From contig NC_043022.1 in NCBI RefSeq assembly GCF_006345805.1, positions 22,010,001-22,074,000 on the forward strand: 64,000 nt of DNA, given 5' to 3'. Positions within the stretch are counted from its first letter, which is position 1; each line of letters starts with the position of its first letter. Shown here one piece after another: positions 3,775-62,739 of this stretch. The translations under genes and the position numbers were made by a program. The DNA is from Octopus sinensis. Taxonomy: Eukaryota. The notes beneath the pieces were generated by a model. That model ran no database searches. It saw nothing but the letters and a program-made list of their open reading frames with translations, and was not told the origin of the DNA.

Positions 3775-4720
3775 TCATCATCATCATCATCGTTTAACGT
3801 CCGCTTTCCATGCTAGCATGGGTTGGACAGTTCAAATACGGTCTGGGAAGCCAGAAGGCTGCACCAGGCTCCAGTCTGATCTGGCAGTGTTTCTACAGCT
3901 GGATGCTCTTCCTAACGCCAACCACTTCGTAAGTGTAGTGGGTGCTTTTTACGTGCCACTGGCACAGGTGCCAGACGAGGCTGGCAAACGGCCACAATCG
4001 GATCGTTATATATATATACATTTATATATATATATATATATATATGTATATCATCATCATTTAACATCCATTGTCCATGCTGGTATGGGTTGGCCAGTTT
4101 CATCAGGGCTGGTAAGCTGAGAGGCTGCACCAGACTCCATTCTGATTTGGCACGGTTCCTATGGCTGGATGCCCTTCCTAACACCAACCTCTCTCAGAGT
4201 GTAATGGGTGCTTCCATGTGCCACCAGCACAGGTGAAAGTTTCATGACACCAGTATCTGTCACAAATATGATATCACTTGCTTGATGGTGGTCTTCTTAA
4301 GCACAACATATTGCCAAAGGTCACTTGTAATTGCCACAATGAGGGCAAACAGTTGACAGGTGCTTTTTATGTGCCACTAGCGTAGGTGCCAGTTACACGA
4401 CACCAACAGCTGCTACAACTATGATTTCACTGGGCTTGATGGGTCTTCTCAAGCAGAGCCTATTATCAAAGGTCTCAGTTACTAGTCATTGCCTCTGTGG
4501 AGCCTGACATTCGAAGATCATGCTTCACCACCTCATCCCATGTCTTCCTGGGTCTTCCTCTTCCACAGCTTCCCTCCACATTTAGAGATCGGCATTCTTC
4601 CCACAGCTGCCCACATCCAGTTACATCCACATGACCATACCAATGCAGTTGTCCCTCATGCACACTACATCTGATGCCTCTTATGCTTACACACTGACAT
4701 TGCACATCCAGCGAAGAACA
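3775..4720 (-). mobile_element. RTE-clade LINE 3' end fragments (family C 3' UTR with (GAT)n tail)
   Basis: Minus ORF LHWYGHV...GRGRPRKTWDEVVKHDL is typical of the RTE ORF C-terminus; it runs into the family C sequence ending in (GAT)n. Confidence 0.8.
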
Positions 4721-5650: not shown

Positions 5651-6543
5651 GGACAAACGTACACATAAATGTGTGTGTGTGTATGACAGGCTTATTTCTA
5701 TCGACCAAGTCCACCTCTCACAATACTTTGGTTAGCATGGGGTTCTAGTAGATGACACTCGCCCGAGGTGCCTTAATGAAAATTATAGTATTGTTTATCC
5801 ATGTATATCTATCTGTTTGTGAAAAAATGCATCCAGTACACTCTGTGAAGCAGTTGCTGTTATGAAGGGTACCCATCTGAAGAAACCATGCCAAACCTGA
5901 GACAGCGGATAAGACCCGATCCCCTGACTCGTTAGATCCTATCACACCATCCAGTCCATATCAGACAAATGATAATGATGATGATGATGATATAAGTTCC
6001 TCGTTAGGTTGTAAGAGACATGAAAAACATTTCTTTCACAATACAACCTGAATAGGGAAAAACAGGAAAAGGACAAGAATAACTTCATTTCTCCTGAATC
6101 TATTATGAGATCCAAGCCACAATCAATCAATTTGGCTATAAAATAAATAATTGGAGAAACAACACACACCTCACTTCCGCCTTTTTCTCCAACCTCCTTT
6201 GCTCCGCTGAAAGCTTGTCATGAATATTTAACTGGATTGTCAATCAATTTGATCAGAATACAAGTGAAGTAGAAAAAAGAAGAACAACAACAACAGAAAC
6301 CTCCCTCCCCTCTGTTATATTCTCCTGTCTTTTCTCTTTTCACCCCTGAGTCTATCAATTATGTTAAGAAACAGTTGTTATAGCAGCAGGAAATGTTGAT
6401 ATTTAGATATTTATGTACTACTGAAAGATGAAAGAGAGATAGAATATGTGATGACATGTCATTTATGCAGATCAATAATTCATATATAATATATAAATAT
6501 GTGAATAGGTATCTGTGTGCTTCTGAGAGTGTATGTATAAGTA

Positions 6544-6584
<41 letters not shown>

Positions 6585-6587
<3 letters not shown>

Positions 6588-6868
6588 TGACAACCTGGCC
6601 ACTGGTGGTGGTGTAACACACCATACTAATCATATCTGTCGGGCATGTGGAAGAGAGTGTAATTCGGCAGGAGGACTCAAACGACATGCAAAGGTACATG
6701 AAGCCCAGTTACAACTACAGCCAGCTATTACCAGTAAAGGTTTTAGTTGCCAATTTTGTACAAGACATTTTGGATCTTTAGCTGGGCTAAAAAGTCACAT
6801 TCGATCACAGCACCAGTAACAGTTAAGCTTCGTGCAATGGCCATACTCGATAACGAGGGGGCAGCCAT
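6585..6868 (+). mobile_element. 5'-truncated RTE-like LINE end encoding two C2H2 zinc fingers
   Basis: CRACGRECNSAGGLKRHAKVH and CQFCTRHFGSLAGLKSHIRSQH, stop, short 3' UTR ending cagccataa; (TA)n on both sides. Confidence 0.65.
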
Positions 6869-6889
6869 AATATATATATATATATATAT

Positions 6890-7355
6890 AATCAAATTTG
6901 ATGACTGGCATCCGTGCTAGTGGAGTGCTAAGAGCACCATCTGAGCGTGATCGTTGCCAGAGCAGCAAACTGGCTTCGTGCCGGTGGCACGTAAAAAGCA
7001 CCATTCAAGTGTGATCATTACCAGTGTAGCCTTACTGGCATTTGTGCTGGTGGCATGTGAAAAAACATTTGAGCATGGTCATTGCCAGTGTTGCTGGACT
7101 GGCTCCTGTGCAGGTGGCATGTAAAAAACACCATTTGAGCACGGTCGTTGCCAGTACCGCTTGACTGGCCCTCGTGCTGGTGGCATGTAAAAGCACCCAC
7201 TACACTCTTGGAGTGGTTGGAGTTAGGAAGGGCATCCAGCGGTAGAGACTCTGCCAGATCAGATTGGAGCCTGGTGCAGGCATCTGGTTCGCCAGTCCTC
7301 AGTCAAATCGTCCAACCCATGCTAGCATGAAAAGCGGATGTTAAACGATGATGAT

Positions 7356-7357
<2 letters not shown>
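6890..7357 (+). mobile_element. Family C (RTE 3' UTR/SINE-like) copy
   Basis: Subrepeats tgccggtggcacgtaaaaagcacc, then ...ggacgttaaacgatgatgatg-type tail. Confidence 0.8.
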
Positions 7358-7404
<47 letters not shown>

Positions 7405-7679
7405 CAATATAATTATCCAGGTACTTGGATGGTATTTTATTTTGTCAACTCTAGAAGGATGAAGGGCAAAGATGACTTCAGTGGGATTTGAACCCAGAAC
7501 ATAGAGGGCTGTAACTAAACATTGCAACACATTTACCATGACACTCCAATGATTCTGTCAGTTCATAATTTTTTGGTGGGTGGGCAGAGCTGATTAAAAC
7601 ACCTCAGTATTTAGCTGGTGTTTACTTTGTCAATACCAGAGAGATGCAAGGTAAAGTTGACTTTAGCAGGAGGTGAACA

Positions 7680-8030
7680 TCATCATCATCATCGTTTAAT
7701 GTCCGTTTTCCATGCTAGCATGGGTTGGACGGTTTGATCGGGGTCTGGGAAGCCGTGAGGCTGCACCAGGCTCCAGTCTGATCTGGCAGTGTTTCTACAG
7801 CTGGATGCCCTTCCTAACGCCAACCACTCTGTGAGTGTAGTGGGTGCTTTTTACGTGCCACCGGCACAGGTGTCAGGGGAGTCTGGCAGCAGCCATGATC
7901 AGTTGGTGCTTTTTATGTGCCACTGGCACAGAAGCCAGTCAAGGCGGTGCTGGCATCAACCACGTTTGGATGGTGCATTTTACGTGCCACCGGCACAGGT
8001 ATCACAACTACTATTTCCATTTGATATTTA
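7680..8030 (-). mobile_element. Family C copy
   Basis: Begins catcatcatcatcgtttaatgtccg (reverse complement of the tail). Confidence 0.8.
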
Positions 8031-19967: not shown

Positions 19968-20191
19968 TTAACCCTTTAGTGTTTAAACTGGCCATATCTG
20001 GCCCAAATATTCTGTTTTATAATCAAACTGGGAATATCTAGCCCCTCAAACCTAACCTACATTGACATTCAAAAAATAAACAATCACATCATTGAAACCT
20101 CAAAGCTATGAGATAATGCATGATTAATTCAAAACAATTTGAGTGAAAAAGTATTACATTTAACAGAGTAATCTGAACACTAAAGGGTTAA
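19968..20191. mobile_element. piggyBac-like MITE
   Basis: TTAA-ccctttagtgtt ... aacactaaaggg-TTAA termini; family also at 48090, 57165 and 61456. Confidence 0.8.
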
Positions 20192-20376: not shown

Positions 20377-20505
20377 TCTTAGTTTTTCTAACTTCTTACG
20401 TCCTAGGTAACCTCGGCAGCAGGCTTGGAATTTGGTAATTGTTCCTGTGATCTTCTCATCACGAGCCACTTCAAGGCTAGTAAGTGAACCAGCACGGAAG
20501 AAAAC
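20377..20505 (-). CDS. MYO18: Myosin-XVIII exon: end of converter plus IQ motif
   Basis: tacag|GTT...AGA|gtaagt, 129 nt, phase 0/0. [43 protein letters not shown] aligns to recalled human MYO18A VFFRAGTLARLEEQRDEQ...FQAACRGYLAR. Confidence 0.92.
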
Positions 20506-31725: not shown

Positions 31726-32260
31726 TCATCATCATCATTGTTCGACCGTGGTCAAGACAATGGAATTTACCATGCTACGCCAGACTTCATGGTCCATCAT
31801 AGCATTACAGAGGTCCTGTTGCTGGATGCCTGTATCCCTGGAGATTACATCAGGGTAGGAGAGTGTGCACCCTCTGGTATTGCGAGTAGATGGCTTCCAG
31901 AGGAGAAGAGTAGAAATTGCCTCGTTTTCAGCTCTACAACAATGTCCAGCAAACTGGACTCTTCTACCTTTCACAAGAGATGACACAGCTTCCCATATAT
32001 TTGCATTTTGGTTGGATGACGCTTCCACCATAAGAGGCTTATCTATCATAGGTAAATTTCTAAGGTGGACTGTGGTAATTTTAAACAAAGCACTGAAGGC
32101 AGAATCTCAACAAAGGCTCACAAATAAAGGAACAACTGTAAAACTGTTCTTTCATATAGGAGGCAATGACTACAAAGGAACAACCCCAGAAGGAAGCCTC
32201 CTCCAACTGATTATTCAATGCAATCTGCATCCAATATATATTGCAAGCAGGGGAGTGAGC
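31726..32260 (-). mobile_element. RTE/RTE-X LINE 3' fragment
   Basis: GRRVQFAGHCCRAENE...LLLWKP...SYPDVISRDTG...AMMDHEVWRS, followed by a (GAT)n tail. Confidence 0.75.
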
Positions 32261-32429: not shown

Positions 32430-33560
32430 ATAAGGATAGAAACTCACAGAGCCCAGGTTGTATGTAAATTTTACTTAAATGGTACCTGCTGACATGGAGA
32501 AACAGGAAAGGGCTGCAGGTTTGCCCATCCCAAAACTTATAAGAACAACAAGCAGGGAAACCTGAAACAAAGCCAGCAAAAAAATAGAGGGAAATCATCA
32601 AGCATGGATCTATAGACTAATAGTGTACCAACTGGAAGAAGTATGTCTCAAAAGAGTAGGAAAAGAGATCAATGCATGCATTTTGCATCCTTCAAAAGGC
32701 AATATGCAGAGGCTGTGCAAACTGCAGCTATCAAACAACAGTGTTTTTTGAACATGACCGAGAAGATAGTACAGCAGCTGACATGGATGTACAGGATGCA
32801 AACTCAAAGCTATGCATTCCAATGCACAAGACCGCCTCGGATGACAGTCCCAGAATGGCCACCACTAACACCTACCCCAATATCGCAACCATATTCCTAC
32901 AGAACATTGGAGGTCTGTTACATCTCAGCAACAGAGGTAAAATTCTCGATCTAAAAGAGCTTGCTACATGCAATCAAGTAATATGCATGGCACTCACTGA
33001 AATTCATCTGGCCCCTGGTGTAACAGATATGGAAGTGCACATACCACGTTGCATTTCATACAACCAGAAGGGAAAGAAGCCACAGTAGAGCTGCTATGCA
33101 CATCCATGAAGATGTCACACCTCTTGTATCACTGTCACATTCAAACTCAGTTTGTGACACCTTAATAATACATATAAAGCAAGCTGATGTAGCTGTATGC
33201 ACAATATATCATCCACCGAATACCATGAAACATGACGGAAAATTTGAGGATAGCCTCAAACACATCGAAGAGGTATTAACAAACCTAGATCAGAACATCA
33301 ACATACCTTCCACATATCAAATGGCCAGAAGGTCACATCCTCTCTGGGATGTCACTGCATAAACAAAAGCATGTAGAGTCATTATTTGAACTTACTAATA
33401 AACTGTTCATGGAGCATGTGATACTCTGGCCAACCAGGGGAAACAAAATATTGGACCTGCACTTCACAAATAATGTGGACCTTATCTATAATGTGAAGGT
33501 GATACCAATGGCACTCTCAGATCACAACATGATTGAACTATATATGGGGCAGGTTTGAGA
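32430..33560 (+). mobile_element. CR1-group LINE remnant: ORF1 CCCH finger plus APE endonuclease
   Basis: VCKFYLNGTC*HGETGKGCRFAHPK; then NIGGL...ALTEIHL, YHPP, PTRGNKILDL, LSDHNMI (APE motifs) with frameshifts. Confidence 0.8.
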
Positions 33561-39606: not shown

Positions 39607-40133
39607 ATAGGAAAAGGAAAGATCCAAAGAAGGGAAGACAGAGGAAAAAAAAATCGACAACAGTACACACGCGGTCACATTTTGAATGTATATATATATA
39701 TACACATCTACATATATTCAGTCAACAGCTGAAATCTGGAGGTGCTCAATATAAAGTCTTTATTGAGGACTAGGTCCCTGGAGTAAAGAGTGGCTATAAG
39801 AGAAATCTAGGTGAGCTGATATGAGTTAGTTATACAGGTAAATACAATAAGGTTTTGATATATATTAATATACATACATATACACAGAGAGACAACTAAA
39901 AAAAATTCATCCTCAAACCCAACAAATTCATTTACGTGTGTGTGTGTGTGTGTGTGTAGTTGTAGGCAGAGTAATAAAAGTCAAACATTGAGGAAGGAAA
40001 TTTATGTGGGGTTTGGTGTAGGGTTGCAACCATCCAACTGTTGCACCCTTGCAGAAACTGAACAAGAGAAACAGTAGAACACATGACACCAAGGAGCAGG
40101 GCAGGGTTTTAAAAAAAATATGATAATACATAC

Positions 40134-40787
40134 ATTGAACTCTGAACCATGAAGCTGGGGTCCCATTTTATAGTGGGAACGTATAAGAAGCTGAGGAAGA
40201 TCAACAAATTTGTTGTTGTTGTTGTTGTTAGAGTTATCTTCATCATCACTGGCAGTAGTGATCCAACAGCGAAAGTTGTTGCATATAAAATCCTTGACAG
40301 AGTATTCCAGTGACAGAGATGTGTCACAAGAAGAGTAGGCAGATGAAGAAGAGAGAGAACTGGCTAAAGATGAGCACGATTCGAAGGACGAGAAGGAAGA
40401 TTCCAAAGAAAGGAACTTGGTTTGGGTAGCAGAACCGTGAAGGCTGCTCAGGTCCTCGTCAATGTAGGAAATAAGATCATCCTCATCAGAGAGGGGTTGT
40501 TTGGTCTTGGTTTGCCCCTCACTTTTGTCTGGACTTTCAGCAGGTAGACATGGGTAAGACAGTAAAGGTAACACAGCTGTAGTAGTGTTATTTTCCTCAT
40601 CTGGCTCTTCTTCAGCAAGGTATTGTGCAAGTAACAGATTTTGGGATGGCATGATAATCATGCAGGAAATATAACTGTTCAGCTGATTGCTAAAGTCAGT
40701 GTGAAGAACAGAGTCCGGCCACTTCACAGGACACCTTGACTTCGTGCTTACTGGTAGAATTTGGTGGGTACTGATAAGTTCTTCCAT
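40134..40787 (-). CDS. Candidate alternative first coding exon of MYO18 (218 aa, Ser/acidic-rich)
   Basis: Longest ORF in the window and non-repetitive; acaATGG start; AAT|gtatgt donor after exactly 218 codons (phase 0, matching the 20505 acceptor). Confidence 0.6.
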
Positions 40788-42089
40788 TGTTGTATAACAG
40801 GGGCTGAGAGGGAAAGAGAGAGAGAGTGGATTGAAGGCAAAGAAGAGTGGGGAGGGAGTAGAGAAGGGAGTGTGTGGTATATGTGGTGAAAAAATTTAAG
40901 GGATACCAATATGAAACTGTGTTTCAAAGGAGGTGGTGGTTGAAGAACTGGTTGTTTGGGAGTGAATGGTGTCTAAAGTTCCGTGGGAAGAAGGGTTCAT
41001 AGTTACACCTTAACTACTGCAGGTAGCGAAACAGTGGATGGAACAGTCAGGATTGAAGGGGACTGTGTGAGAAGAGTCTACCCCGGAAGACTGAGAAAGG
41101 TATTCTAACTAAACTGACTTAGTTACAGTAGTAACACGGAGAGGAGAGGAGAAGGCAGAGGAGAGAGTGTGAGAGAGAGAGAGAGTGTGAGAGAGAGAGA
41201 GAGAGAGGCAGGGAGGGGGATTAACAAGTAAACAGACTGTGAATACCAACTAACAGACAAACAGCAGATGGGATGGAGGTGGAGGAGGTGAGTGTAGGTG
41301 TAGTGAATCAGATGGTAGTGAGACATCATCATCATCATCACCATCATCATCATGGGTACTGTACAGACAGTATGTGTGTGGGGGTGGGGGGGGTTGGTTG
41401 TAGTGTGAAGGTAAGGACGACAGAAGAAGGTGAACATCAACAGAAAGTCTGGTGAGGAGACTGACAGAGGAAGTAGTTGCAATGTTCAACAGTGGTGGCA
41501 ATTGTAACTACTACTACTACAACAGTAGCATTAGTAGCAGCTACAACAACTAGTAACAACAGAACTCCATCACTATATACAAAAGGTATAATGCTTGCAT
41601 GGCTTATGTGTGTGATTATAAACACACACACACATATGCACACACACACACATGCACACACACACACACGCACACACACATGCACACACACGCACACACA
41701 CACACACACATGCACACACACACACACACACATTGAAATACAGGTATACTCAAATGCACATAGAATCTCCAACCACAAATCCTCATTTAGGATCCTGGAA
41801 AAGATGCTATGCCACATCCTTTGTTGACCACGTATGGCACCCGAAGGACAAAGGGAAGATCCTAGAAAAAACTAAGTTCCTGTATCAACGGGAACAAATG
41901 TTGCAAGCTGTGCATAGCAGAATGGGCAAAGTTATTAAGGAGCTCCCTCGACCCAGGGAATATCTTAAATTCAATGATGGAAGTTTTCAGAGCCTTTTCA
42001 GAGCCTATTTACACTTCAAGCGATTCCTACTAAGATCCTGGGACCTGCAAGCTAACTGGGTGGATTGCAGATAATGGTCTAAAGAAGAC

Positions 42090-43589: not shown

Positions 43590-44085
43590 TGTGAGGAAGA
43601 GAAAGATGCAGATAGAAGAGGAGTTGTAGTTCAATTTCTTAGGGCAGAGTGGGTGAGAAGTGTGTTGTTACATGTGGGTGGGACCCAACTCTTCTAGCAC
43701 TCAGTTTCATGAACGGGTCTTCCCTAGGACCTCATATCACCAAACATCTTGCTCCACTGTCATTTTCTCTATAAGTCCCGAAAATCCTAAAATCAGTCCT
43801 TACCACTTCATCCCATGTCTTTCTGGGTCTCTCTCGTCCGCAGATACCATCCACTTTCAGTGACAGGCACTTCAGTATACAGCTAGTCTTCACTCATACA
43901 CATCACTTGTCCAAACCAATGCTTTCTCATCTCCTGCAGGCCACATTTGGTCCCTCTTATGCCCAACTTTTCTCTCAACACAGTTGTGCTTTCTCGGCCG
44001 TGCACACCGATGTTGCAAATCCAACAAAGCACTCTACCTTCATTCCCCTCCAGCCTCCGCATGTCCTTCACAGTCAGAGCCCATG
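43590..44085 (-). mobile_element. RTE LINE 3' fragment
   Basis: VETWALTVKDMRRLE...LREKLGIRG...HWFGQVMCM. Confidence 0.75.
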
Positions 44086-44267
44086 TCTCAACACACACAA
44101 GCATGTATCTGACTCATACATTGTTCGCTTTCCAGATATTTGTATATTACTGCATGTACTTTATACGCACTGTTTGACAAGTTGTGGTGCACCCGAGCAC
44201 TGTATACAATAATTTCATTATTATTATTATTATTTCTCGTAGAGACATGTACGGTGGTGGGGCGATA

Positions 44268-47741: not shown

Positions 47742-48070
47742 ATCCACTCAGTCGAAGTCGACTCTCGGTCACTCGTTGGATCAGTGTCCTCCAGTCAGTT
47801 CTATCCTGGGCCGCTTCTTTAAGATTGGCTATGTCCATTCTGGTATCACTTTTGATGGTGTCAAGCCAGCGGGTTCTTGGTCAGCCTCTTCCTCTCTTGC
47901 TACTGACCATTCCGAGCATGATGTCCTTCTCCAGGGATTTTCTCCGCATAATATGACCGAAATATGCCAATCTACGCTTGGTGATCCTAGCTTCTAGCAA
48001 CATTTTCAGCCTTATCTGCTTAAGAACTTCTCCATTGGTGAGCCTCGCTGTCCATGGAATCCGCAAAAGT
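47742..48070 (-). mobile_element. RTE-BovB-like LINE 3' fragment
   Basis: RIPWTARLTNGEVL...RRLAYFGHIMRRKSLEKDIMLG...DWRTLIQRVTESRLRLSG*. Confidence 0.85.
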
Positions 48071-48089
48071 CTTTGTACTTTAGCAAACC

Positions 48090-48318
48090 TTAACCCTTTA
48101 GCATTCAGATACTTCTGTCAAATGTAAAGCTTATTTATTCACACCATGTAAAATTAATCCTGCATTATTTCATGGCTTTGAGATTTCAATGATGTGATTG
48201 TTTATTTTTAAAAATGACACAATAAGGTAGCTATGAATGACCATATCGGACTAGTTTGAACATAAAATAGGTAGAATATTTTGGCCGGATATGGCCGGTT
48301 TAAACACCAAAGGGTTAA
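48090..48318. mobile_element. piggyBac-like MITE
   Basis: TTAA-ccctttagca ... caaaggg-TTAA. Confidence 0.8.
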
Positions 48319-49049
48319 ATCTGACAGGGAGGGCTTCATTAATCAAAACTTCCAAAACCGATCTAATTGACTCTTTCACCACTACTACAACAACCACTGC
48401 TCTTCTTAACCCCCCCCCCCCCCTGACTGCATAGAACCCCCACTTCTTTCACATAAAATAATTCGCTGTTCCCAAGTATATCTTTTTTCCAGACAACTCA
48501 GTAACCACTATCTTCATGCTGAAAGCAAGCCTCTCCGTTTTTTCTATTTAGAATCTCTCCCTCTGTCTTAATTACAAATCCATAACATGTATGGTGTATC
48601 CAAGACTACATTATGCAACACACAAACATATTCATTCCTAATATGTACTCTGTATTTCTAGCAACTCGTAGCAGTTGCCTACATTTTGTATGTAGTGTAC
48701 CAATAACTAATCAAACACTGTAAATAAATACCTTTCAATCATGAATCGGTTTACGTATTTGTTTACATACACACTTAACCACTACATGTGCTTTGTGTTA
48801 GAAAACAGGAAGATGCAATTTGAGATTTTAGCTGCTATTTCTAAAAGTTAGAGACTAGGCAGACTAGACATTATTTCATCACAGGCACACCTTGATTGAG
48901 TAGGCCAAAGATTAAAAAAACCTATCAGCCTGTGTCATTAATTCATTCATAATTATATAAGAAGTGTTCTGTCAGACAGTTTCAATTCATTTTCAATATG
49001 ATCAAAAATTATTAATTAACAAGATATTAGTAACTTTAAATATTGGTAT

Positions 49050-49764
49050 TGATTTTAAACAGTTTTGACCAAGTGGTCAGTATTCAATAAAATTGCCATT
49101 GGCTTCAACCACGGCCTCCAGACGACTTCAAAATCTCCTGCAACATTTCTGGATGCTCTCCTTGCTTAAGTTGGTCAATGCTGCCATAATCCTTGCCTTC
49201 AGTTCATCCTTGGGGTTACAAGGAGTTTTGTGGATCTCTTGCTCAACTGCACCCCACACATAATAATCAAGGGGCTTGCAGTCTGGAGAAGTAGGCGGCC
49301 AGATGATAGGGTAATGTGGTCACAGAAATTGTCTGACAGCCAGACCGGGTTCTCTTGCTTGTGTGGTATGGTGTAGAGTCCTGTTGCCAGACAAAGGGTC
49401 TTCCAGCAGCCACCCTCTTCACCAAGGGCGGCACTAGGCCTCCATGTGGAGTCCGAAGCAGTGTAGGAAGATGGATGTAGTCATCATAATGCTGACTGGA
49501 TGTTTGATTTCTATCACTCTTGGTACTCTGCACTATCCTCAGATTGACATCCAAACACTCTGAAATGTTCATATTGGAGCTTCTGGCATGAATGCCAGGT
49601 AGTACAGCATGTCATTTCCAAATTTCTGGCATCATGGTGGTGTTTTTCTCACAGATGGTGCCCAGCTGACTCTACTATACTGTGTAGTTGCCAAAATCAA
49701 AAACAAACAAAGCGCCTGCATGAAATTAAAAATATAAAATGCCGACAGTTTACCCATTACATCC

Positions 49765-49770
<6 letters not shown>
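49050..49770 (-). mobile_element. Internally deleted maT-like element (duplicate at about 52340-53090)
   Basis: WVKRVAAGRPFVWQQDSTPYHTSKRT motif; homologous to 42090-43130. Confidence 0.75.
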
Positions 49771-49800
<30 letters not shown>

Positions 49801-49873
49801 TATATGTAAATATATGTATATATGTATGTGTATACACATATATATATATATATATATGTATGTATGTGTATAC

Positions 49874-49907
<34 letters not shown>

Positions 49908-49990
49908 GTATACATATATATATATATAATATATATATATGTATGTATGTGTATACATATATATATATGTATGTATGTATGTATGTGTAT

Positions 49991-50028
<38 letters not shown>

Positions 50029-50095
50029 GTATGTGTATACATATATATATATGTATGTATGTATGTATGTGTATATATATATATATATATATGCA
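49770..50095. repeat. Long compound (TA)n/(TATG)n microsatellite (counterpart about 53090-53375)
   Basis: Direct inspection. Confidence 0.95.
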
Positions 50096-50909
50096 CACAT
50101 ATTTGCCACTATCTCTCCTGCTCTCTCTAGAACTCTTGCTGTTTTCCACTCTTTCTCTCTCTCTCTCTCTCTCTCACTAGGTAACCATGTACTTTTTCTA
50201 CAGCAAGGCACCTGTTTCTGTCTCTCTATAACACTCTAACCTGCCATCATCTGATATTTTTATTTTCACATAATAGGTGCAGGCGTAACAGTGTGGTTGA
50301 GAAGTTTGTATTTTTGGATTCAGTTTTCTACTGCATGGCACCTTAGGCAAGTGTCTTCTGACGTTCACGATGGAAACTGAAAGAAGTCATTCATACACAT
50401 GCATGCATGCACGTATGTGTGTATGTTTGTGAATATGCTTCTGTTACCTTGTCTTGACATTGCATTATTGTTGAAAACAAACGTCATTCATTTCCAATAT
50501 TCTTCAAAAACATGTCTAGCCTTGGAAGAAGCATCATCTTGCTGGGAAACAAGTATGGCTTGGCAACAAGAAAAGCATTCAGCTGGAGAAAACCTGTCTC
50601 AATAAACAGTCCAACAAAAGCAGGCATAGAAATGTGACTACAAATGTAATTCTGAACAATTTACAGTTTTTGGCTCGCTTTATGTGGCTTCTTCGCATTA
50701 GACTCTTTACTCTTTTACTTATTTCAGTCATTTGACTGTGGCCATGCTGGAGCACCGCCTTTATAGTCGAGCAAATCAACTCCGGGACTTATTCTTTGTA
50801 AGCCTAGTACTTATTCTACCAGTTACTTTTGCTGATCTGCCAAGTTATGGGGACGTAAACACACCAGCATCGGTTGTCAAGCGATGTTGGGGGGAGGGAC
50901 AAACACACA

Positions 50910-50961
<52 letters not shown>

Positions 50962-51300
50962 TATACATACATACACACACACACACATATACAATGGGCT
51001 TCTTCCAGTTTCCGTCTACCAAATCCACTCACAAGGCTTCGGCTGGCCTGAGGCTATAGTAGAAGACACTTGCCCAAGGTGCCATGCAGTGCGACTGAAC
51101 CTGGGACCATGTGGTTGTTAAGCAAGCTACATACCACACAGCCACTCATACTATATATTTTTCTTGCAGAATATGTCTCAATGTAACTCTTCCATCCACT
51201 CAGTCATTCTTTTAAGATGTCAGACAGTCAGTATTCATTGATTTAACATCTTTCTATTTTTCAGTCAACTAGTGTCTGGGTAAGTAATAGTAAACACTAT

Positions 51301-51343
51301 ACTTCTCTGAGGAGGTCTAATAAGACTGAAACATATCTAGAGT
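51301..51343 (+). ncRNA. Hammerhead motif, duplicate copy 1 (cleavage triplet ATC, stem III pair broken)
   Basis: CTGAGGA-ggtct(aata)agact-GAAA-catatc. Confidence 0.6.
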
Positions 51344-53088
51344 TACCAATGAACCTACCAAATATAAAACTTTTCTCCACTACATACTCACATACCCACT
51401 ATCTATTTCTAATTGATTTTAATTAATTTAAATCCCTCGTTATTCTGGAGTCGTTTCCTCTTAACTTCTGGGACCAGAATTAATCATGAAAACTAATTGC
51501 TTTTCCTCACTACAATTCATGTATTCTTATATTTGTTTCAGTCATTTGACTGTGGCCATGCTGGAGCACCGCCTTTAGTCGAACAAATCGACCCTAGGAC
51601 TTATTCTGTAAGTCCAGTACTTACTCTATCAGTCATTTTTGCCGAACCACTAAGTTACGGGGACGTAAACACACCAGTTTGGTTGTCAAGCGATGGTGGG
51701 GGGAACAAACACACATATACATACATATATATATGACGGGCTTCTTTCAGTTTCCATCTACCAAATCCACTCACAAGGCTTTGGTCGGCCTGAGGTTATA
51801 GTAGAAGACACTTGTCCAAGGTGCTAACCTATCAGCCTGTGTCATTAACTCATTCATAATTATATAAGAAATGTTCTGTCAGACAGTTTCAATTCATTTT
51901 CAATATGATCAAAAATGAGTATTTTTTTTCATTTACTTGTTTCAGTCATTTGACTGTGGCCATGCTGGAGCACCGCCTTTAGTCGAGCATATTGACCCCA
52001 GGACTTATTCTTTGTAAGCCTAGTACTTATTCTATCAGTCTCTTTTGCCAAACCGCTAAGTTACGGGGACGTAAACACACCAGCATCGGTTGTCAAGCGA
52101 TGTTGGGGGAGGAGGGCAAACACAACACACAAACCTACATATATATATATATTATATATATATATACGACGGGCTTCTTTCAGTTTCCGTCTACCAAATC
52201 CACTCACAAGGCTATAGCAGAAGACACTTGCCCAAGGTGCCACACAGTGGGACTGAACCCAGAACCATGTGGTTGGTAAGCAAACTACTTACCACACAGT
52301 CACTCCTACACCTATTAGTAACTTTAAATATTGGTATTGATTTTAAACAGTTTTGACCAAGTGGTCAGTATTCAATAAGATTGCCATTGGCTTCAACTAC
52401 GGTCTCCAGACGACTTCGAAATCTTCAGTAACATTTCTGGATGCTCTCCTTGTTTAAGTTGGTCAATGCTGCCATAATCCTTGTCTTCAGTTCATCCTTG
52501 GGGTTACAAGGAGTTTTGTGGGTCTCTTGCTCAACTACACCCCACACATAATAATCAAGGGGGTTGCAGTCTGGAGAAGTAGGTGGCCAGATGTTAGGGT
52601 AATGTGGTCACATAAATTGTCTGACAGCCAGACCGGGTTCTCTTGCTTGTGTGGTATGGTGTAGAATCCTGTTGCCAGACAAAGGGTCTTCCAGCAGCCA
52701 CCCTCTTCACCCAGGGCGGCACTGGGCCTCCATATGGAGTCTGAAGCAGTGTGGGAAAATGGATGTAGGCATCAACATCACCATCGCTAGTAATCACTCC
52801 AAACACCATAACACTGACTGGATGTTTGATTTCTATCACTCTCAGTACTCTGCACTATCCTCAGATTGACATCCAAAAACTCTGAAATGTTCATATTGGA
52901 GCTTCTGGCATGAATGCCAAGTAGTACAGCATGTCGTTTCCAAATTTCTGGCATCATGGTGGTGTTTTTCTCACAGATGGTGCCCAACTGACTCTACTAT
53001 ACTGTGTAGTTGCCAAAATCAAAAACAAACAATGCGTCTGCGTGAGATTAAAAATATAAAATGCCGACAGTTTACCCATTACATCCTC

Positions 53089-53122
<34 letters not shown>

Positions 53123-53210
53123 TATATGTAAATATATGTATATATGTATATGTATATATATCTATGTATATATGTATATATATATATATGTATATATGTA
53201 TATATATGTA

Positions 53211-53254
<44 letters not shown>

Positions 53255-53300
53255 TGTATATTTATATATATATATGTATATATATATGTATGTATACATG

Positions 53301-53379
<79 letters not shown>

Positions 53380-54320
53380 TATTTGCCACTATCTCTCCGG
53401 CTCTCTCTAGAACTCTTGCTGTTTTCCACTCTTTCTCTCTCTCTCTCGCTAGGTAACCATGTACCTCCTCTACAGCAAGCCACCTGTTTCTGTCTCTCTA
53501 TAACACTCTAACCTACCATCGTCTGATATTTTTATTTTCACATAATAGGTGCAGGCGTAACAGTGTGGTTGAGAAGTTTGTATTTTTGGATTCAGTTTTC
53601 CACTGCATGGCACCTTAGGCAAGTGTCTTCTGACGTTCACGATGGAAACTGAAACAAGTCATTCATACACATGCATGCATGCACGTATGTGTGTATGTTT
53701 GTGAATATGCTTCTGTCTCCTTGTCTTGACATTGCATTATTGTTGAAAACAAACGTCATTCATTTCCAATATTCTTCAAAAACATGTCTAGCCATGGAGG
53801 AAGCATCATCTTGCTGGGAAACAAGTATGGGTTGGCAACAAGAAAAGCATTCAGCTGGAGAAAACCTGTCTCAATAAACAGTCCAACAAAAGCAGGCATA
53901 GAAATGTGACTACAAATGTAATTCTGAGCAATTTACAGTTTTTGGCTCGCTTTATGTGGCTTCTTCGCATTAGACTCTTTACTCTTTTACTTATTTCAGT
54001 CATTTGACTGTGGCCATGCTGGAGCACCGCCTTTATAGTCAAGCAAATCGACACAAGAGCTTATTCTTTGTAAGCCTTGTACTTATTCTACCAGTTTCTT
54101 TCGCCGAACTGCCAAGTTACGGGGATGTAAACACACCAGCACCGGTTGTCAAGCGATGTTGGGGGGAGGGACAAACACACACACACACATATATATGTAT
54201 ATATATGTGTATATATATATGTATATATATATATAAAATTAATTAAGGGTAGAAATTGATATTTATCAATTAAAACCAGTGGTCAAGCATATTAAAAAAG
54301 AATCCGAAGATTAAAATATT

Positions 54321-54457
54321 TATATATACCAATTAAGGACTGAACACGAAAAATGGACTGTCAACATGCTAGATATAGACGTTTTGTGGAGAATGGCGAT
54401 TTGACATCTATATCTAGCATGTTGACTGTCTATTTTTCGTGTTCAGTCCTTAATTGG

Positions 54458-54466
<9 letters not shown>
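54321..54466. repeat. Long inverted repeat (~59-bp arms) within an insertion in a SINE microsatellite
   Basis: tatatataccaattaaggactgaacacgaaaaat...gtcaacatgctagatataga and its reverse complement, 2 mismatches, 27-nt loop. Confidence 0.85.
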
Positions 54467-54499
<33 letters not shown>

Positions 54500-54812
54500 T
54501 ATACAATGGGCTTCTTCCAGTTTCCGCCTACCAAATCCACTCACAAGGCCTTGGTTGGCCTGAGGCTATAGTAGAAGACACTTGCCCAAGGTGCCATGCA
54601 GTGGGACTGAACCTGGGACCATGTGGTTGTTAAGCAAGCTACATACCACACAGCCACTCATACTATATATTTTTCTTGCAGAATATGTCCCAATATAACT
54701 CTTCCATCCACTCAGTCATTCTTTTAAGATGTCAGACAGTCAGTATTCATTGATTTAACATCTTTCTATTTTTCAGTCAACTAGTGTCTGGGTAAGTAAT
54801 AGTAAACACTAT

Positions 54813-54855
54813 ACTCCTCTGAGGAGGTCTAATAAGACTGAAACATGTCTAGAGT
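54813..54855 (+). ncRNA. Hammerhead motif with intact catalytic core, duplicate copy 2
   Basis: CTGAGGA (54819-25), stem II ggtct/agact, GAAA (54840-43), palindromic ACATGT, GTC site at 54847-49; stem I only partly paired. Confidence 0.65.
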
Positions 54856-55446
54856 TACCAATAAACCTACCAAATATAAAACTTTTCTCCACTACATACT
54901 CACATACCCACTATCTATTTCTAATTGATTTTAATTAATTTAAATCCCTAATTATTCTGGAGTCGTTTCCTCTTAACTTCTGGGACCAGAATTAATCATG
55001 AAAACTAATTGCTTTTCCTCACTACAATTCATGTATTCTTATATGTGTTTCAGTCATTTGACTGTGGCCATGCTGGAGCACTGCCTTTAGTTGAACAAAT
55101 CGACCCTAGGACTTATTCTGTAAGTCCAGTACTTATTCTATTGGTCATTTTTGCCGGACCGCTAAGTTACGGGGACGTAAACACACCAGCTTTGGTTGTC
55201 AAGCGATGGTGGGGGGAACAAACACACATATACATACATATATAAATGACGGGCTTCTTTCAGTTTCCATCTACCAAATCCACTCACAAGGCTTTGGTTG
55301 GCCTGAGGTTATAGTAGAAGACACTTGTCCAAGGTGCTAAGCAGTGAGACTGAACCCAGAACCATGTGGTTCGTAAGCAAGTTACTTACCACACAGTCAC
55401 TCATATATTATCACAATTTTGTGCCTCACTTTTAAAATATATTACC

Positions 55447-57164: not shown

Positions 57165-57393
57165 TTAACCCTTTAGCATTTAAACCGGCCATATCCAGCC
57201 AAAAGTATTCTGCCTGTTTTATGTTCAAACTGGCCAGATCTGGTCTCTCACACCAACCCTACAATGTCGTTTTAAAATTTAACAGCAACCTCATCAAAAT
57301 CTCATAGCTACAAGATAATGCATGATTAGTTCAAAACAATTTGGATGAAAAAGCATTAATTTTGGCAGAATAATGCAAACACTAAAGGGTTAA
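57165..57393. mobile_element. piggyBac-like MITE
   Basis: TTAA-ccctttagca ... actaaaggg-TTAA. Confidence 0.8.
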
Positions 57394-61043: not shown

Positions 61044-61333
61044 GTTGTAGGGATGAGACTGTAACAGTATTGAGGTGATTAAAACAGTGGTGATGCACCC
61101 ATATCCTACTGTAAATGTGTAAAAAAAAATGAAATGTAATACTACAGAAAGGTGACATAGTAAATAGTGGTATAGTACAAGCTACCCTGACATGCTACAG
61201 GTAACATTACCGAAGACCAGAGACGGTAACATCACAGTGGATGACAATATAAATAACATAAGGAACCACCGGGGGTGGCCTCACAGAGGGTGTCAAAATA
61301 AATAGCATAATCAATGAATATAAAGGTCCTTAC

Positions 61334-61399
61334 CTGACTTAATCCAATGCGATAGTTGAGTTTATCGATATCCATGTGATCCAGATAATGTTTGATAAT
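61334..61399 (-). CDS. MYO18: Myosin-XVIII converter exon
   Basis: tcttcag|ATT...CAG|gtaagg, 66 nt, phase 0/0. IIKHYLDHMDIDKLNYRIGLSQ matches recalled human [22 protein letters not shown] in length and in the GLS motif. Confidence 0.88.
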
Positions 61400-61577
61400 C
61401 TGAAGAGTAAATAACAACAATAAGACAGAAATACAACTGCAACATTGAACAACAATTAACCCTTTAGTGTTTAGATTACTCTGTCAAATGTAATACTTAT
61501 TTATTCACATTGTTTTGAATTAATTGTGCCTTATCTCATAGCTTCAAAATTTTGACGATGTGATTATTTATCTTTAG

Positions 61578-61761
61578 CCATTTAATCTGCCTGAAACTTT
61601 ATTCCATAACTCGGATTTACAGCTCAGTAAATCAACAACTATTGGATTACAGTTTGTAGCAATCATGGATCAATCTGGATTTCCAATCATCAAATTAGGG
61701 GACCCGAAACTGGAAGGGAAAAAATGGAAGGTGGCATCGAAGATTATCTCTGGCAGCGTTG
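61578..61761 (+). pseudogene. Orphan exon resembling an adhesion-GPCR GAIN domain (subdomain B strands)
   Basis: tttag|CCA...GTTG|gtatgt; PFNLPETLFHNSDLQLSKSTTIGLQFVAIMDQSGFP...KVASKIISGSVG follows the LP..L..N / QF.....F / S.VI..S.G pattern of recalled ADGRG2 and ADGRG6. Confidence 0.6.
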
Positions 61762-61884
61762 GTATGTATGTGTTGGCCTTGTGAAGGGGTCGGGGAGAGG
61801 TTTGGGTCAACTTTACTTTTGTTCTCATTGTCAAGAACATCAGCTACACAGACAAGTCTGTTCGTATGTCATTTGTGAGATGGG

Positions 61885-62145
61885 CACCTATGCCGGTGGC
61901 ATGTGTAAAAAGATTCGAGCGAGGTCATTGGCAGTACCACCTGACTGGCCCCATGCCGGTGGCACGTAAAAAGCACCCACTACACTCTCGGAGTGGTTGG
62001 CATTAGGAAGGGCATCCAGCTGTAGAAACTCTGCCAGACCAGATTGGAGCCTGGTGCAGCCATCTGGCTTGCCAGTCCTCAGTCAAATCATCCAACCCAT
62101 GCTAGCATGGAAAGCGGACGTTAAACGATGATGATGATGATGATG
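61885..62145 (+). mobile_element. Family C (RTE 3' end) with (GAT)n tail
   Basis: ggcattaggaagggcatccagctgtag...ggacgttaaacgatgatgatgatg. Confidence 0.85.
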
Positions 62146-62739
62146 AATGACATTGTAGGGTAGGCGCGAGAGGCTGAATATCATAAGTTTGAACATAAAA
62201 CAAGGATAATATTGTGGCCGGATATGGCCGGTTTAAACACTCAAGGGTTAAAGAATACAGAAATGTTTTTTGTTTTTGGTGTTGTTACTGTTTAGCCCAA
62301 GGTAACTTCTGATCCAGCAGACCTATGATCATTCAGCCAAAGTGTACAGAGGACTACATTATCATATCTGTCCTACTGTGATGTTGGTGTTTGGCGCCAG
62401 GTCAGCCTTGATCTAAGGAGCCTATGACCAAAGATGTGCCAGCAGTGATCATCCCTTTGTTTATTCAGACATTATCTCTAGGACTACATTATTTCATGGG
62501 ACTAAACAATAACAAGTGAACCAATGTTAAAGCTTCTGCATGGTAACTCAACTTGCTAGAAATAGCAACCAGATCTTTAATTCATTGACTGTCATCGTGG
62601 AATAGGAAAGAATGCATTGGATAAAGCAATTCTAGACAACCACTAAATAGATTGGATGGTCAGAGCTGGAATGTCTTTGACTATATTTTTGTTAGATGAG
62701 GGTCTAAACAATAACAACAAAAGTGTGTGTGTGTGTGCA

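What the first reader, a model, noticed from the sequence alone, without database searches (positions are those of the whole stretch)
61578..62145. Apparent 5' transduction of an adhesion-GPCR GAIN exon into a MITE inside a myosin intron
Seen: a piggyBac-like MITE is cleanly split (tttag | aatgac) by 568 nt made of a 184-nt open exon with a phase-1 G|gtatgt donor, about 123 nt of intron-like sequence, and an RTE-type 3' end with (GAT)n tail. No other GPCR exons are visible in the window. Known (recalled): GAIN-B of ADGRG6/ADGRG2 reads LPPNLLEN...AQFTFF...LVSYVMACSIG and LPASLMNN...VQFNFF...LISYVISSSV, paralleling LPETLFHN...LQFVAI...VASKIISGSVG. Inference: reverse transcription started at an intronic RTE tail in an aGPCR pre-mRNA and copied the upstream exon. 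The MITE supplies a usable acceptor, so the exon is splice-competent on the antisense strand: exon shuffling caught in progress, within a potentially mobile DNA carrier.
Basis: partly seen in the sequence, partly recalled or inferred. Interest (0 to 1): 0.75.

Follow-up and report, generated by a model that had tools for sequence, protein, structure and literature searches.

The report
Receptor exon fragment retro-copied into transposon
A 568-base piece of an octopus adhesion-receptor gene (part of one exon, the start of its intron and a neighbouring short repeat) was copied through RNA into an old DNA transposon inside a myosin intron; it is a real but decayed one-off of a known kind of event, with no sign that it does anything.

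Summary
A 225-bp piggyBac-like MITE (TTAA-flanked, 61460-62247) is split cleanly by a 568-nt insert (61578-62145). Three intact copies in the window run straight through the break point.

- **Exon piece.** The first 184 nt match one protein among 1.8 billion: Octopus vulgaris ADGRA3-like adhesion GPCR, residues 378-435 (91%, E 2e-25). These lie just before its GPS motif. A model of that region has the GAIN fold.
- **Junction kept.** Homology stops at G|GTATGTA, the same exon-intron junction as in the Argonauta orthologue. The copy lacks about 12 nt of that exon's 5' end.
- **Rest of the insert.** 119 unique nt follow, then a two-unit SINE-like repeat ending in (GAT)6G. Its tail also ends a LINE fragment in the window.
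- **Context.** No other aGPCR exon lies in the 64 kb. The host is a minus-strand myosin II-like gene.

Best reading: target-primed reverse transcription started at the repeat's tail on an unspliced ADGRA3-like transcript and ran upstream (5' transduction).

The donor locus could not be fetched, so template switching stays open. "RTE-type" is unverified. Splice competence and mobility of the carrier are speculation. This is a new member of a known kind, of modest interest.

The parts
61456..61459 (.). TTAA target-site duplication, left of the MITE
   Evidence: Read directly. The same TTAA flanks the other MITE copies.
61460..61577 (+). Left arm of the piggyBac-like MITE; ends ...TTATTTATCTTTAG
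   Evidence: Aligns with three intact copies in the window. Inverted end is CCCTTTAGTGTTTA.
61578..61761 (+). 5'-truncated copy of an ADGRA3-like GAIN-B exon (61 codons plus 1 nt)
   Evidence: Matches P0001 residues 378-435 at 91%, E 2e-25. tblastn E 5e-29. 78.8% nucleotide identity to the Argonauta exon, L001 79482-79665. The GAIN fold of the parent region is shown.
61762..61880 (+). Intron-derived unique sequence; starts with the native donor GTATGTA
   Evidence: Protein homology ends exactly at 61761, and GTTG|GTATGTA is shared with Argonauta. There is no other copy in the window or in L001. Similarity to the Argonauta intron is not significant.
61881..62126 (+). SINE-like repeat: two ~60-nt units plus a ~165-nt tail region shared with a LINE 3' UTR
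   Evidence: At least 9 further copies in the window at 78-90% identity. Unit structure read. The tail is 79% identical to the LINE 3' UTR at 4050-4229(-).
62127..62145 (+). (GAT)6G microsatellite tail, abutting the MITE right arm
   Evidence: Read directly. The same tail ends the other copies and the LINE fragment.
62146..62247 (+). Right arm of the MITE; starts AATGACATTGTAGGG
62248..62251 (.). TTAA target-site duplication, right of the MITE
61334..61399 (-). Host myosin II-like exon (IIKHYLDHMDIDKLNYRIGLSQ). Its acceptor lies 56 nt from the MITE's left TTAA and 178 nt from the insert.
   Evidence: Myosin-9, E 5e-14, for the two exons joined.
20377..20505 (-). Next myosin exon ([18 protein letters not shown]...IQ motif), 40.8 kb downstream on the minus strand
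   Evidence: (IQ motif).
4050..4720 (-). LINE 3' fragment that shares the repeat's tail (candidate partner LINE family)
   Evidence: The ORF ends ...GRGRPRKTWDEVVKHDLRMSG. The 3' UTR holds the same unit and a 183-nt tail plus GAT repeats.
19968..20191 (-). Intact MITE copy, used as an empty-site reference (others at 48090-48319 +, 57165-57393 -)

Best explanation
This is a dead retro-copy made by target-primed reverse transcription.

In an Octopus ancestor, an ADGRA3-like adhesion-GPCR gene carried a sense-oriented SINE-like repeat in the intron about 120 nt downstream of one GAIN-B exon. The repeat's 3' region and (GAT)n tail are those of a LINE family.

1. The LINE's reverse transcriptase recognised that tail on an unspliced or intron-terminated transcript of the gene.
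2. It primed on a nick inside an older piggyBac-like MITE in a myosin intron. The target there reads AATGA, which can pair with the GAU repeat.
3. It copied the repeat and kept going upstream through the intron piece and most of the exon.
4. It stopped about 12 nt short of the exon's 5' end.

The result is a 5' transduction of an exon-intron fragment.

**Shown:** the split MITE, the identity of the exon, the retained exon-intron junction, the LINE-type tail exactly at the 3' junction, the 5' truncation, and the absence of other aGPCR exons.

**Inferred:** the donor arrangement, the RNA intermediate, and the enzyme.

The copy has since decayed and has no demonstrated function.
For: - **Insertion.** The joined flanks rebuild a complete MITE, collinear with three other copies.
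- **Exon identity.** Residues 378-435 of O. vulgaris ADGRA3-like protein, E 2e-25. They lie just upstream of the GPS motif at 462-505. The region models as a GAIN domain: pLDDT 84.8, and the top 12 PDB fold matches are all GAIN domains.
- **Unspliced template.** Homology to the spliced protein stops at 61761. The next bases, GTATGTA, equal the donor of the Argonauta orthologous exon.
- **Truncation.** The Argonauta exon starts about 12 nt further 5'.
- **Retroelement tail at the junction.** (GAT)6G abuts the MITE right arm. The same tail ends at least 9 other copies and a LINE fragment with an ORF2-type C-terminus. A related Argonauta LINE fragment has an RT domain and the same tail.
- **Same strand.** The intron piece runs directly into a canonical unit start of the repeat.
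- **Unique cargo.** Exon and intron piece are single-copy in the window and in the 92-kb Argonauta locus.
- **Precedent.** LINEs of the RTE clade, one of the microsatellite-tailed clades, are reported active in octopus (PMC9115989, PMC13282606).
Against: - The donor locus was not seen. The O. vulgaris gene spans 214 kb, so no DNA was returned. No other route gave octopus DNA.
- No target-site duplication flanks the insert. By eye, three other copies of this repeat in the window also lack clear ones, so this is weak evidence either way.
- The 119-nt 'intron' piece is not significantly similar to the Argonauta intron: 22 of 300 shuffles score as high. Its intronic origin rests on its contiguity with the donor site.
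- The first three codons of the copy differ from both orthologues (PFN against AIY). The 5' junction may therefore hold a 1-nt indel or non-templated bases.
Confidence: 0.62

Rival explanations
1. Template-switch chimera. Reverse transcription began on a free transcript of the SINE-like repeat. At the repeat's 5' end the enzyme jumped to an unlinked ADGRA3-like pre-mRNA or intron fragment and copied about 300 nt of it. In the donor gene there would then be no repeat next to the exon.
For: The unique piece joins the repeat exactly at a canonical unit start, which is where two other copies examined also begin. That is where a full-length repeat RNA would end. From memory, chimeric retrocopies made by template switching are described for mammalian L1 (Buzdin and colleagues); I did not check this in a paper here. 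The donor arrangement is unverified.
Against: It needs a second, nuclear, unspliced template entered at an internal intron position. Linked read-through is simpler, given that repeats of this kind are reported at about 12% of an octopus genome (PMC13282606) and are dense in genes: more than 100 tail matches lie in the 92-kb Argonauta orthologue locus.
Confidence: 0.22
2. DNA-level capture. A genomic fragment of the ADGRA3-like locus was pasted into a double-strand break in the MITE during repair, without an RNA intermediate.
For: There is no target-site duplication. The exon-intron junction is retained, which is as expected from DNA as from pre-mRNA.
Against: The fragment ends exactly at the end of a retroelement's microsatellite tail. 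A random DNA fragment would do this only by coincidence. The orientation and 5' truncation fit reverse transcription.
Confidence: 0.07
3. A native exon of a plus-strand aGPCR gene nested in the myosin intron, or a live exonised cassette used by an antisense transcript.
For: The frame is open over all 61 codons. A pyrimidine-rich ...TTTATCTTTAG precedes it and a good donor follows it. Octopus introns can be tens of kb long, so partner exons could lie outside the window.
Against: - No other aGPCR exon lies in the 61.5 kb upstream.
- The first ~12 nt of the orthologous exon are missing, and a TAG sits immediately upstream in frame.
- Both ends coincide with the break point of a MITE.
- There are six private amino-acid changes against two on the O. 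vulgaris branch.
- By my rough estimate (about 15 changes, each with a ~4-5% chance of making a stop), an open 61-codon frame has roughly even odds under neutral decay at about 8% divergence.
Confidence: 0.04

Closest known systems
5' transduction by non-LTR retrotransposons (human L1 and SVA, e.g. the SVA_F1 subfamily carrying MAST2 exon 1)
   Same: Host sequence lying upstream of a retroelement, exon included, is reverse-transcribed together with the element and inserted elsewhere. The element's tail sits at the 3' junction and the 5' end is variable (PMC4859970, PMC12593883).
   Different: Here the partner is a microsatellite-tailed LINE/SINE pair of a cephalopod, not L1. The cargo is unspliced (exon plus the start of its intron) rather than a spliced first exon. 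No target-site duplication is seen, and there is no evidence that the chimera became a source element.
Exon shuffling by L1 3' transduction (Moran et al. 1999, cited in PMC4859970)
   Same: A retroelement's machinery moves a host exon to a new intron.
   Different: That cargo lies 3' of the element and depends on read-through of its poly(A) signal. Here the cargo lies 5' of the element, and no new functional exon is shown.
Chimeric retrocopies made by reverse-transcriptase template switching
   Same: A retroelement 3' part is fused to a copy of an unrelated cellular RNA at its 5' side.
   Different: That mechanism needs no linkage in the donor genome. Only the donor locus can tell the two apart.
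Gene-fragment-carrying DNA transposons (Pack-MULEs, Helitron captures)
   Same: An element with terminal inverted repeats contains a host exon fragment between intact ends.
   Different: Here the cargo arrived by an ordinary nested retro-insertion into an old MITE, not by capture during transposition. No second cargo-bearing copy is known.
ADGRA2/ADGRA3 (GPR124/GPR125) adhesion GPCRs
   Same: The parent protein has LRR, Ig, GAIN/GPS and 7tm_2 domains. The exon encodes GAIN-B strands carrying the conserved LPxxLF, LQF...FP and VxSxVIS motifs.
   Different: The window holds only 61 codons of it. It has no GPS motif, no cleavage site and no 7TM region.

Membership tests
Adhesion-GPCR GAIN domain (origin of the ORF) | Significant sequence homology to an aGPCR within the GAIN region | tested here: met
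   61 aa against P0001 residues 378-435: 91%, E 2e-25 among 1.84 billion proteins. P0001 is named ADGRA3-like and has GPS at 462-505 and 7tm_2 at 522-715. A precomputed GAIN_ADGRA3 hit is on record.
Adhesion-GPCR GAIN domain (origin of the ORF) | GAIN fold of the parent region (helical subdomain A plus beta-sandwich subdomain B) | tested here: met
   AlphaFold2 model of P0001 230-520: pLDDT 84.8. The top 12 Foldseek PDB matches are GAIN domains, led by 6v55 at 8e-13 and 4dlo at 4e-11. The exon corresponds to model residues 149-206, in the beta part.
Adhesion-GPCR GAIN domain (origin of the ORF) | Pfam or profile hit of the 61 aa alone | tested here: not met
   hmmscan of the 62 aa at E up to 10 found no family. 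The fragment is too short, and the local Pfam copy did not report GAIN_ADGRA3 for P0001 either.
Adhesion-GPCR GAIN domain (origin of the ORF) | GPS motif and HL|T cleavage site present in the window | tested here: not met
   Only residues 378-435 are represented. No other P0001 segment matches the window.
Non-LTR retrotransposon insertion with 5' transduction | The element's 3' tail lies exactly at the 3' junction with the target | tested here: met
   (GAT)6G at 62127-62145 abuts the MITE right arm. The same tail is on other copies and on a LINE fragment.
Non-LTR retrotransposon insertion with 5' transduction | An empty target site can be reconstructed | tested here: met
   The joined flanks equal an intact MITE, judged against three paralogous copies. 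The orthologous empty site in another species was not available.
Non-LTR retrotransposon insertion with 5' transduction | Target-site duplication flanking the whole insert | tested here: not met
   No duplicated bases at the junction. By eye, three other copies of this repeat also lack clear duplications, so the feature may not define this family.
Non-LTR retrotransposon insertion with 5' transduction | A donor locus in which the transduced sequence lies directly upstream of the source element | not testable with these tools
   The O. vulgaris gene spans 214 kb and no DNA was returned. Word-index searches failed, the look-up of the window ORF found nothing, and the metagenome scan was empty.
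piggyBac-like MITE | TTAA target-site duplication | tested here: met
   TTAA at 61456-61459 and 62248-62251, and around the other copies.
piggyBac-like MITE | Terminal inverted repeats starting CCC...; short, non-coding, multi-copy | tested here: met
   13 of 14 matching ends, 225 bp, four copies in 64 kb at 74-81% identity.
piggyBac-like MITE | An autonomous piggyBac partner with the same ends; evidence of recent mobility | not tested
   No genome-wide search was possible. PiggyBac and MITE families are reported in O. vulgaris (PMC13282606).
RTE-clade LINE tail | The partner LINE's reverse transcriptase groups with RTE | not tested
   Only C-terminal LINE fragments were available.
RTE-clade LINE tail | Microsatellite 3' tail; single-ORF LINE without a Cys/His domain after the RT | tested here: inconclusive
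   A trinucleotide tail is present. Microsatellite tails are called common in RTE (PMC9115989); from memory they also occur in the CR1/L2 groups. The related Argonauta LINE fragment with this tail has a PHD finger after RVT_1.
Myosin heavy chain (host gene) | Motor-domain C-terminal end plus IQ motif | tested here: met
   The two joined minus-strand exons match Myosin-9/-10/-11 at E 5e-14 to 1e-11. Pfam IQ hit at E 1e-4.

The most novel reading that the evidence does not exclude
The exon-intron-repeat chimera is not a dead end. Either it became a source element, or its MITE carrier moved, spreading a GAIN-B coding fragment with a native donor site to other introns. Or the cassette is spliced into a plus-strand transcript antisense to the myosin gene. 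Either would be a live case of retrotransposon-plus-MITE exon shuffling in a cephalopod.
Probability: 0.04. Interest if true: 0.7.

Novelty: new member of a known kind. Interest (0 to 1): 0.33.

Why it matters
It is a clean, fully dissectable example of a microsatellite-tailed LINE/SINE system in an octopus carrying host coding sequence along with it. In my two literature searches, the examples of this process that came up were human L1 and SVA.

Octopus genomes are about two-thirds repeats and are reported to have active LINEs (PMC13282606, PMC9115989). Such events may therefore be common there, and could be counted systematically once one knows what they look like.

This particular copy appears inert, so its value is as an illustration and a search template, not as a functional discovery.

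Tried and rejected
- **Pfam on the 62 aa:** nothing.
- **Word-indexed protein search with the 62 aa:** no candidates. A 97-aa substring of P0001 also found nothing, not even P0001 itself. Negatives from that tool on short queries are therefore uninformative. The exhaustive phmmer search is what found the parent.
- **Rfam on 61300-62400:** no match.
- **Looking up the 81-aa window ORF that spans exon, intron and repeat**, to find sister contigs: not on record.
- **Degenerate exon pattern against metagenome contigs:** no match.
- **Is the 119-nt piece recognisably the Argonauta intron?** Not significant: 22 of 300 shuffles score as high, and other places in the locus score higher.
- **Frameshift at the copy's 5' end.** I first thought PFN against AIY needed one. 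The Argonauta DNA shows that an in-frame alignment with substitutions is equally possible. Left open.
- **Other exons of the receptor gene.** I looked for them in the window; there are none.
- **Myosin hallmark motifs (P-loop, switch I and II).** Absent, because the window holds only the motor's C-terminal end onward.
- **Classifying the LINE by Pfam.** Only RVT_1 and a PHD finger were found, so the clade stays unresolved.

Full report
**What the window is.** The window is repeat-rich animal DNA of about 40% G+C. The only close protein match to the finding is a protein named adhesion G protein-coupled receptor A3-like of Octopus vulgaris. The repeats are also found abundantly in an Argonauta hians locus. 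The window therefore comes from an octopod, most likely an Octopus species. I could not fix the species.

**The split transposon.** TTAA at 61456-61459 and at 62248-62251 bracket an element whose ends are CCCTTTAGTGTTTA and, reverse-complemented, CCCTTGAGTGTTTA. BLAST of the two arms finds three further copies: 19968-20191 minus, 48090-48319 plus and 57165-57393 minus. In all three, the arm sequences are contiguous. Joining 61460-61577 to 62146-62247 gives a 225-bp element that aligns end to end with those copies. There is no gap and no duplicated base at the joint. Pairwise identity among copies is 74-81%, so the family is old.

**The first 184 nt.**
- The frame starting at 61578 is open for 61 codons and is followed by G|GTATGT.
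- Pfam and the word-indexed protein search found nothing with this short peptide.
- An exhaustive phmmer scan of 1.84 billion representatives found one real hit: P0001, 1435 aa, 91% identity over query 4-61 and P0001 378-435, E 2e-25. The three other listed hits are bacterial repeat proteins near E 1e-7 to 1e-4, with unrelated architecture.
- P0001 has LRR, Ig, GPS (462-505) and 7tm_2 (522-715) domains. It is named ADGRA3-like, with orthologues across molluscs and in deuterostomes, annelids, brachiopods and insects. A precomputed GAIN_ADGRA3 hit is on record.
- An AlphaFold2 model of P0001 230-520, built on 24 homologous segments, reached mean pLDDT 84.8. Its twelve best PDB fold matches are all GAIN domains: ADGRG6 6v55 at 8e-13, BAI3 4dlo, latrophilin 4dlq, CD97, GPR56 and others.
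- The exon corresponds to model residues 149-206, in the beta-strand part. It keeps the family's conserved LPxxLF, LQF...FP and VxSxVIS motifs.

The GAIN-B exon claim is correct.

**An exon-intron junction, and a truncated exon.**
- tblastn of P0001 against the window shows that identity ends at ...SGSVG. The spliced protein continues YSITNLS, while the window reads on into GTATGT....
- I fetched the Argonauta hians orthologue locus L001 (92 kb). Its orthologous exon lies at about 79460-79660. The window insert, nt 8-191, aligns to 79482-79665 at 78.8%.
- Both sequences read GTTG|GTATGTA at the 3' end. The copy therefore includes the gene's own donor site and came from unspliced RNA or from DNA.
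- At the 5' end, the Argonauta exon begins after tttcag with GACATAATATCT, then GCAATATATCTG. The window copy starts only at the position of GCA. About 12 nt of the exon are missing.
- An in-frame TAG from the MITE sits immediately upstream.

**How the copy compares with its relatives.** Over 62 aligned residues, the window copy has six private changes, O. vulgaris two and Argonauta three. At two sites the copy keeps the state seen in Argonauta where O. vulgaris differs. This fits either an old copy or a window from another Octopus species.

**No gene around it.** tblastn with P0001 and its ADGRA-like homologues finds no other aGPCR exon anywhere in the 64 kb. Together with the truncation and the MITE junctions, this rules out a native nested gene as far as the window allows.

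**The middle and the 3' part.**
- 61762 to about 61880 has no other copy in the window or in L001.
- Beyond the first seven bases it is not significantly similar to the Argonauta intron: 22 of 300 shuffles score as high. That is unsurprising at this evolutionary distance.
- From about 61881 the sequence is a repeat with at least nine further copies in the window.
- Copies consist of one to five tandem units of about 60 nt, a 3' region of about 165 nt, and (GAT)n. The insert has two units, and the unique piece joins at a unit start.
- The last 183 nt plus tail are 79% identical to the 3' UTR of a LINE fragment at 4050-4720 minus. Its reading frame ends ...GRGRPRKTWDEVVKHDLRMSG.
- In Argonauta the tail occurs more than 100 times in 92 kb. 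One occurrence ends a LINE fragment with the C-terminal part of RVT_1, a PHD finger and a similar C-terminal motif.

The repeat is thus a SINE, or a truncated LINE end, that uses a LINE's tail. Whether that LINE is of the RTE clade is not established. Microsatellite tails are described as common in RTE, and RTE elements are reported active in octopus (PMC9115989). From memory, a PHD finger after the RT is not a classic RTE trait.

**The host gene.**
- On the minus strand, 61334-61399 encodes IIKHYLDHMDIDKLNYRIGLSQ between a good acceptor and a good donor.
- 20377-20505 encodes [43 protein letters not shown].
- Joined, they match the end of the motor and the first IQ motif of myosin II heavy chains: Myosin-9 at E 5e-14, and Pfam IQ.
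- The intron between them is 40.8 kb.
- The MITE's left TTAA lies 56 nt upstream of the 61399 acceptor, and the insert 178 nt upstream. The insert is antisense to the gene, in an intron whose upstream exon is beyond the window.

**Mechanism.** All shown features point one way: a retroelement tail exactly at the 3' junction, same-strand unique sequence running upstream from the element's 5' end, a native exon-intron junction, a ragged 5' end inside the exon, and a target reconstructable as intact. They fit target-primed reverse transcription that began at the tail on an unspliced or intron-terminated ADGRA3-like transcript and continued past the repeat. That is a 5' transduction. The target bases AATGA next to the tail could pair with the GAU repeat.

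No target-site duplication is present. By eye, three other copies of this repeat in the window also lack clear ones.

The main rival is a template switch from a free repeat RNA to an unlinked pre-mRNA. Only the donor locus can separate the two, and I could not obtain it. DNA-level capture is unlikely, because the fragment ends precisely at a retroelement tail.

**What is not supported.**
- The MITE's ...TTTATCTTTAG does look like a possible 3' splice site, and the native donor is intact. But there is no evidence of any plus-strand transcript.
- The piece is 184 nt long, so it would shift the frame of any host.
- By my rough estimate (about 15 changes, each with a ~4-5% chance of making a stop), an open frame over 61 codons has about even odds under neutral decay at this divergence.
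- The MITE family is old, and no second cargo-bearing copy is known.
- The repeat in the insert is about 8.6% from a rough consensus. On the scale of PMC13282606 that is roughly 20-25 million years. This is an inference.

**Comparison and verdict.** The closest known events are L1 and SVA 5' transductions, including SVA_F1 with MAST2 exon 1, and L1-mediated exon shuffling (PMC4859970, PMC12593883). This case differs in four ways: the retroelement system, the unspliced cargo, the lack of a target-site duplication, and its landing inside a MITE. It is a new member of a known kind. It is well documented at the recipient site, unverified at the donor site, and without evidence of function.

Noticed in passing
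window 49482-51827 and 52804-55340: Two adjacent segments of about 2.4 kb are 92-97% identical: a local tandem or segmental duplication. Just upstream of each copy, and partly overlapping it, lie short minus-strand ORFs (49131-49611, 52428-52854) that look like mariner-type transposase remnants by eye; the one ORF tested had no Pfam hit.
   Followed up: partly
window 20506-61333 (minus strand): The myosin II-like host gene has a 40.8-kb intron between the exon ending ...YRIGLSQ and the exon starting VFFRAG. Nearly the whole window is this one intron, filled with repeats.
   Followed up: partly
window 4050-4720 (-); L001 83654-84922 (-): LINE 3' fragments share the SINE-like repeat's tail. The Argonauta fragment has the RVT_1 C-terminal part, then a PHD finger, then a ...RRLLWFGHVERM...GRGRLRRTWNDAVKEDL... 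motif. The partner LINE's clade is unresolved and may not be RTE.
   Followed up: partly
window 6903-7357, 7678-8010, 61881-62145; L001 throughout: The SINE-like repeat has a variable number (1-5) of ~60-nt tandem units at its 5' end. BLAST of the insert found no match to its unit region in the 92-kb Argonauta locus, whereas the ~165-nt tail matches there more than 100 times. The units may therefore be an Octopus-lineage addition to an older tail.
   Followed up: partly
window 6541-6816 (+): A C2H2 zinc-finger ORF (two fingers, Pfam zf-C2H2 E 2e-6) lies about 90 nt upstream of a five-unit copy of the SINE-like repeat, separated from it by an (AT)n run. It may be a remnant of a LINE or of one of the expanded octopus zinc-finger genes.
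   Followed up: no
window 40005-40895 (-): A 297-aa open frame rich in Ser, Asp and Glu has no Pfam hit. It lies in the only part of the window with strong positive GC skew (40-44 kb). It is the longest ORF in the window, and its nature is unknown.
   Followed up: partly
window 47743-48117 (-), 43735-44113 (-), 31738-32106 (-), 32660-33359 (+): Several other short ORFs carry what look by eye like LINE ORF2 C-terminal motifs (...GRGRPRTRWLD..., ...GRERPRKTWDEVV...) or an endonuclease-like stretch. They do not share the (GAT)n tail. The two tested by Pfam (47884-48117, 32660-33085) gave no hit.
   Followed up: no
tool behaviour: The word-indexed protein search returned 'no candidate' for a 97-aa exact substring of a protein it had itself returned earlier. 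Its negatives for short queries should not be read as absence.
   Followed up: yes
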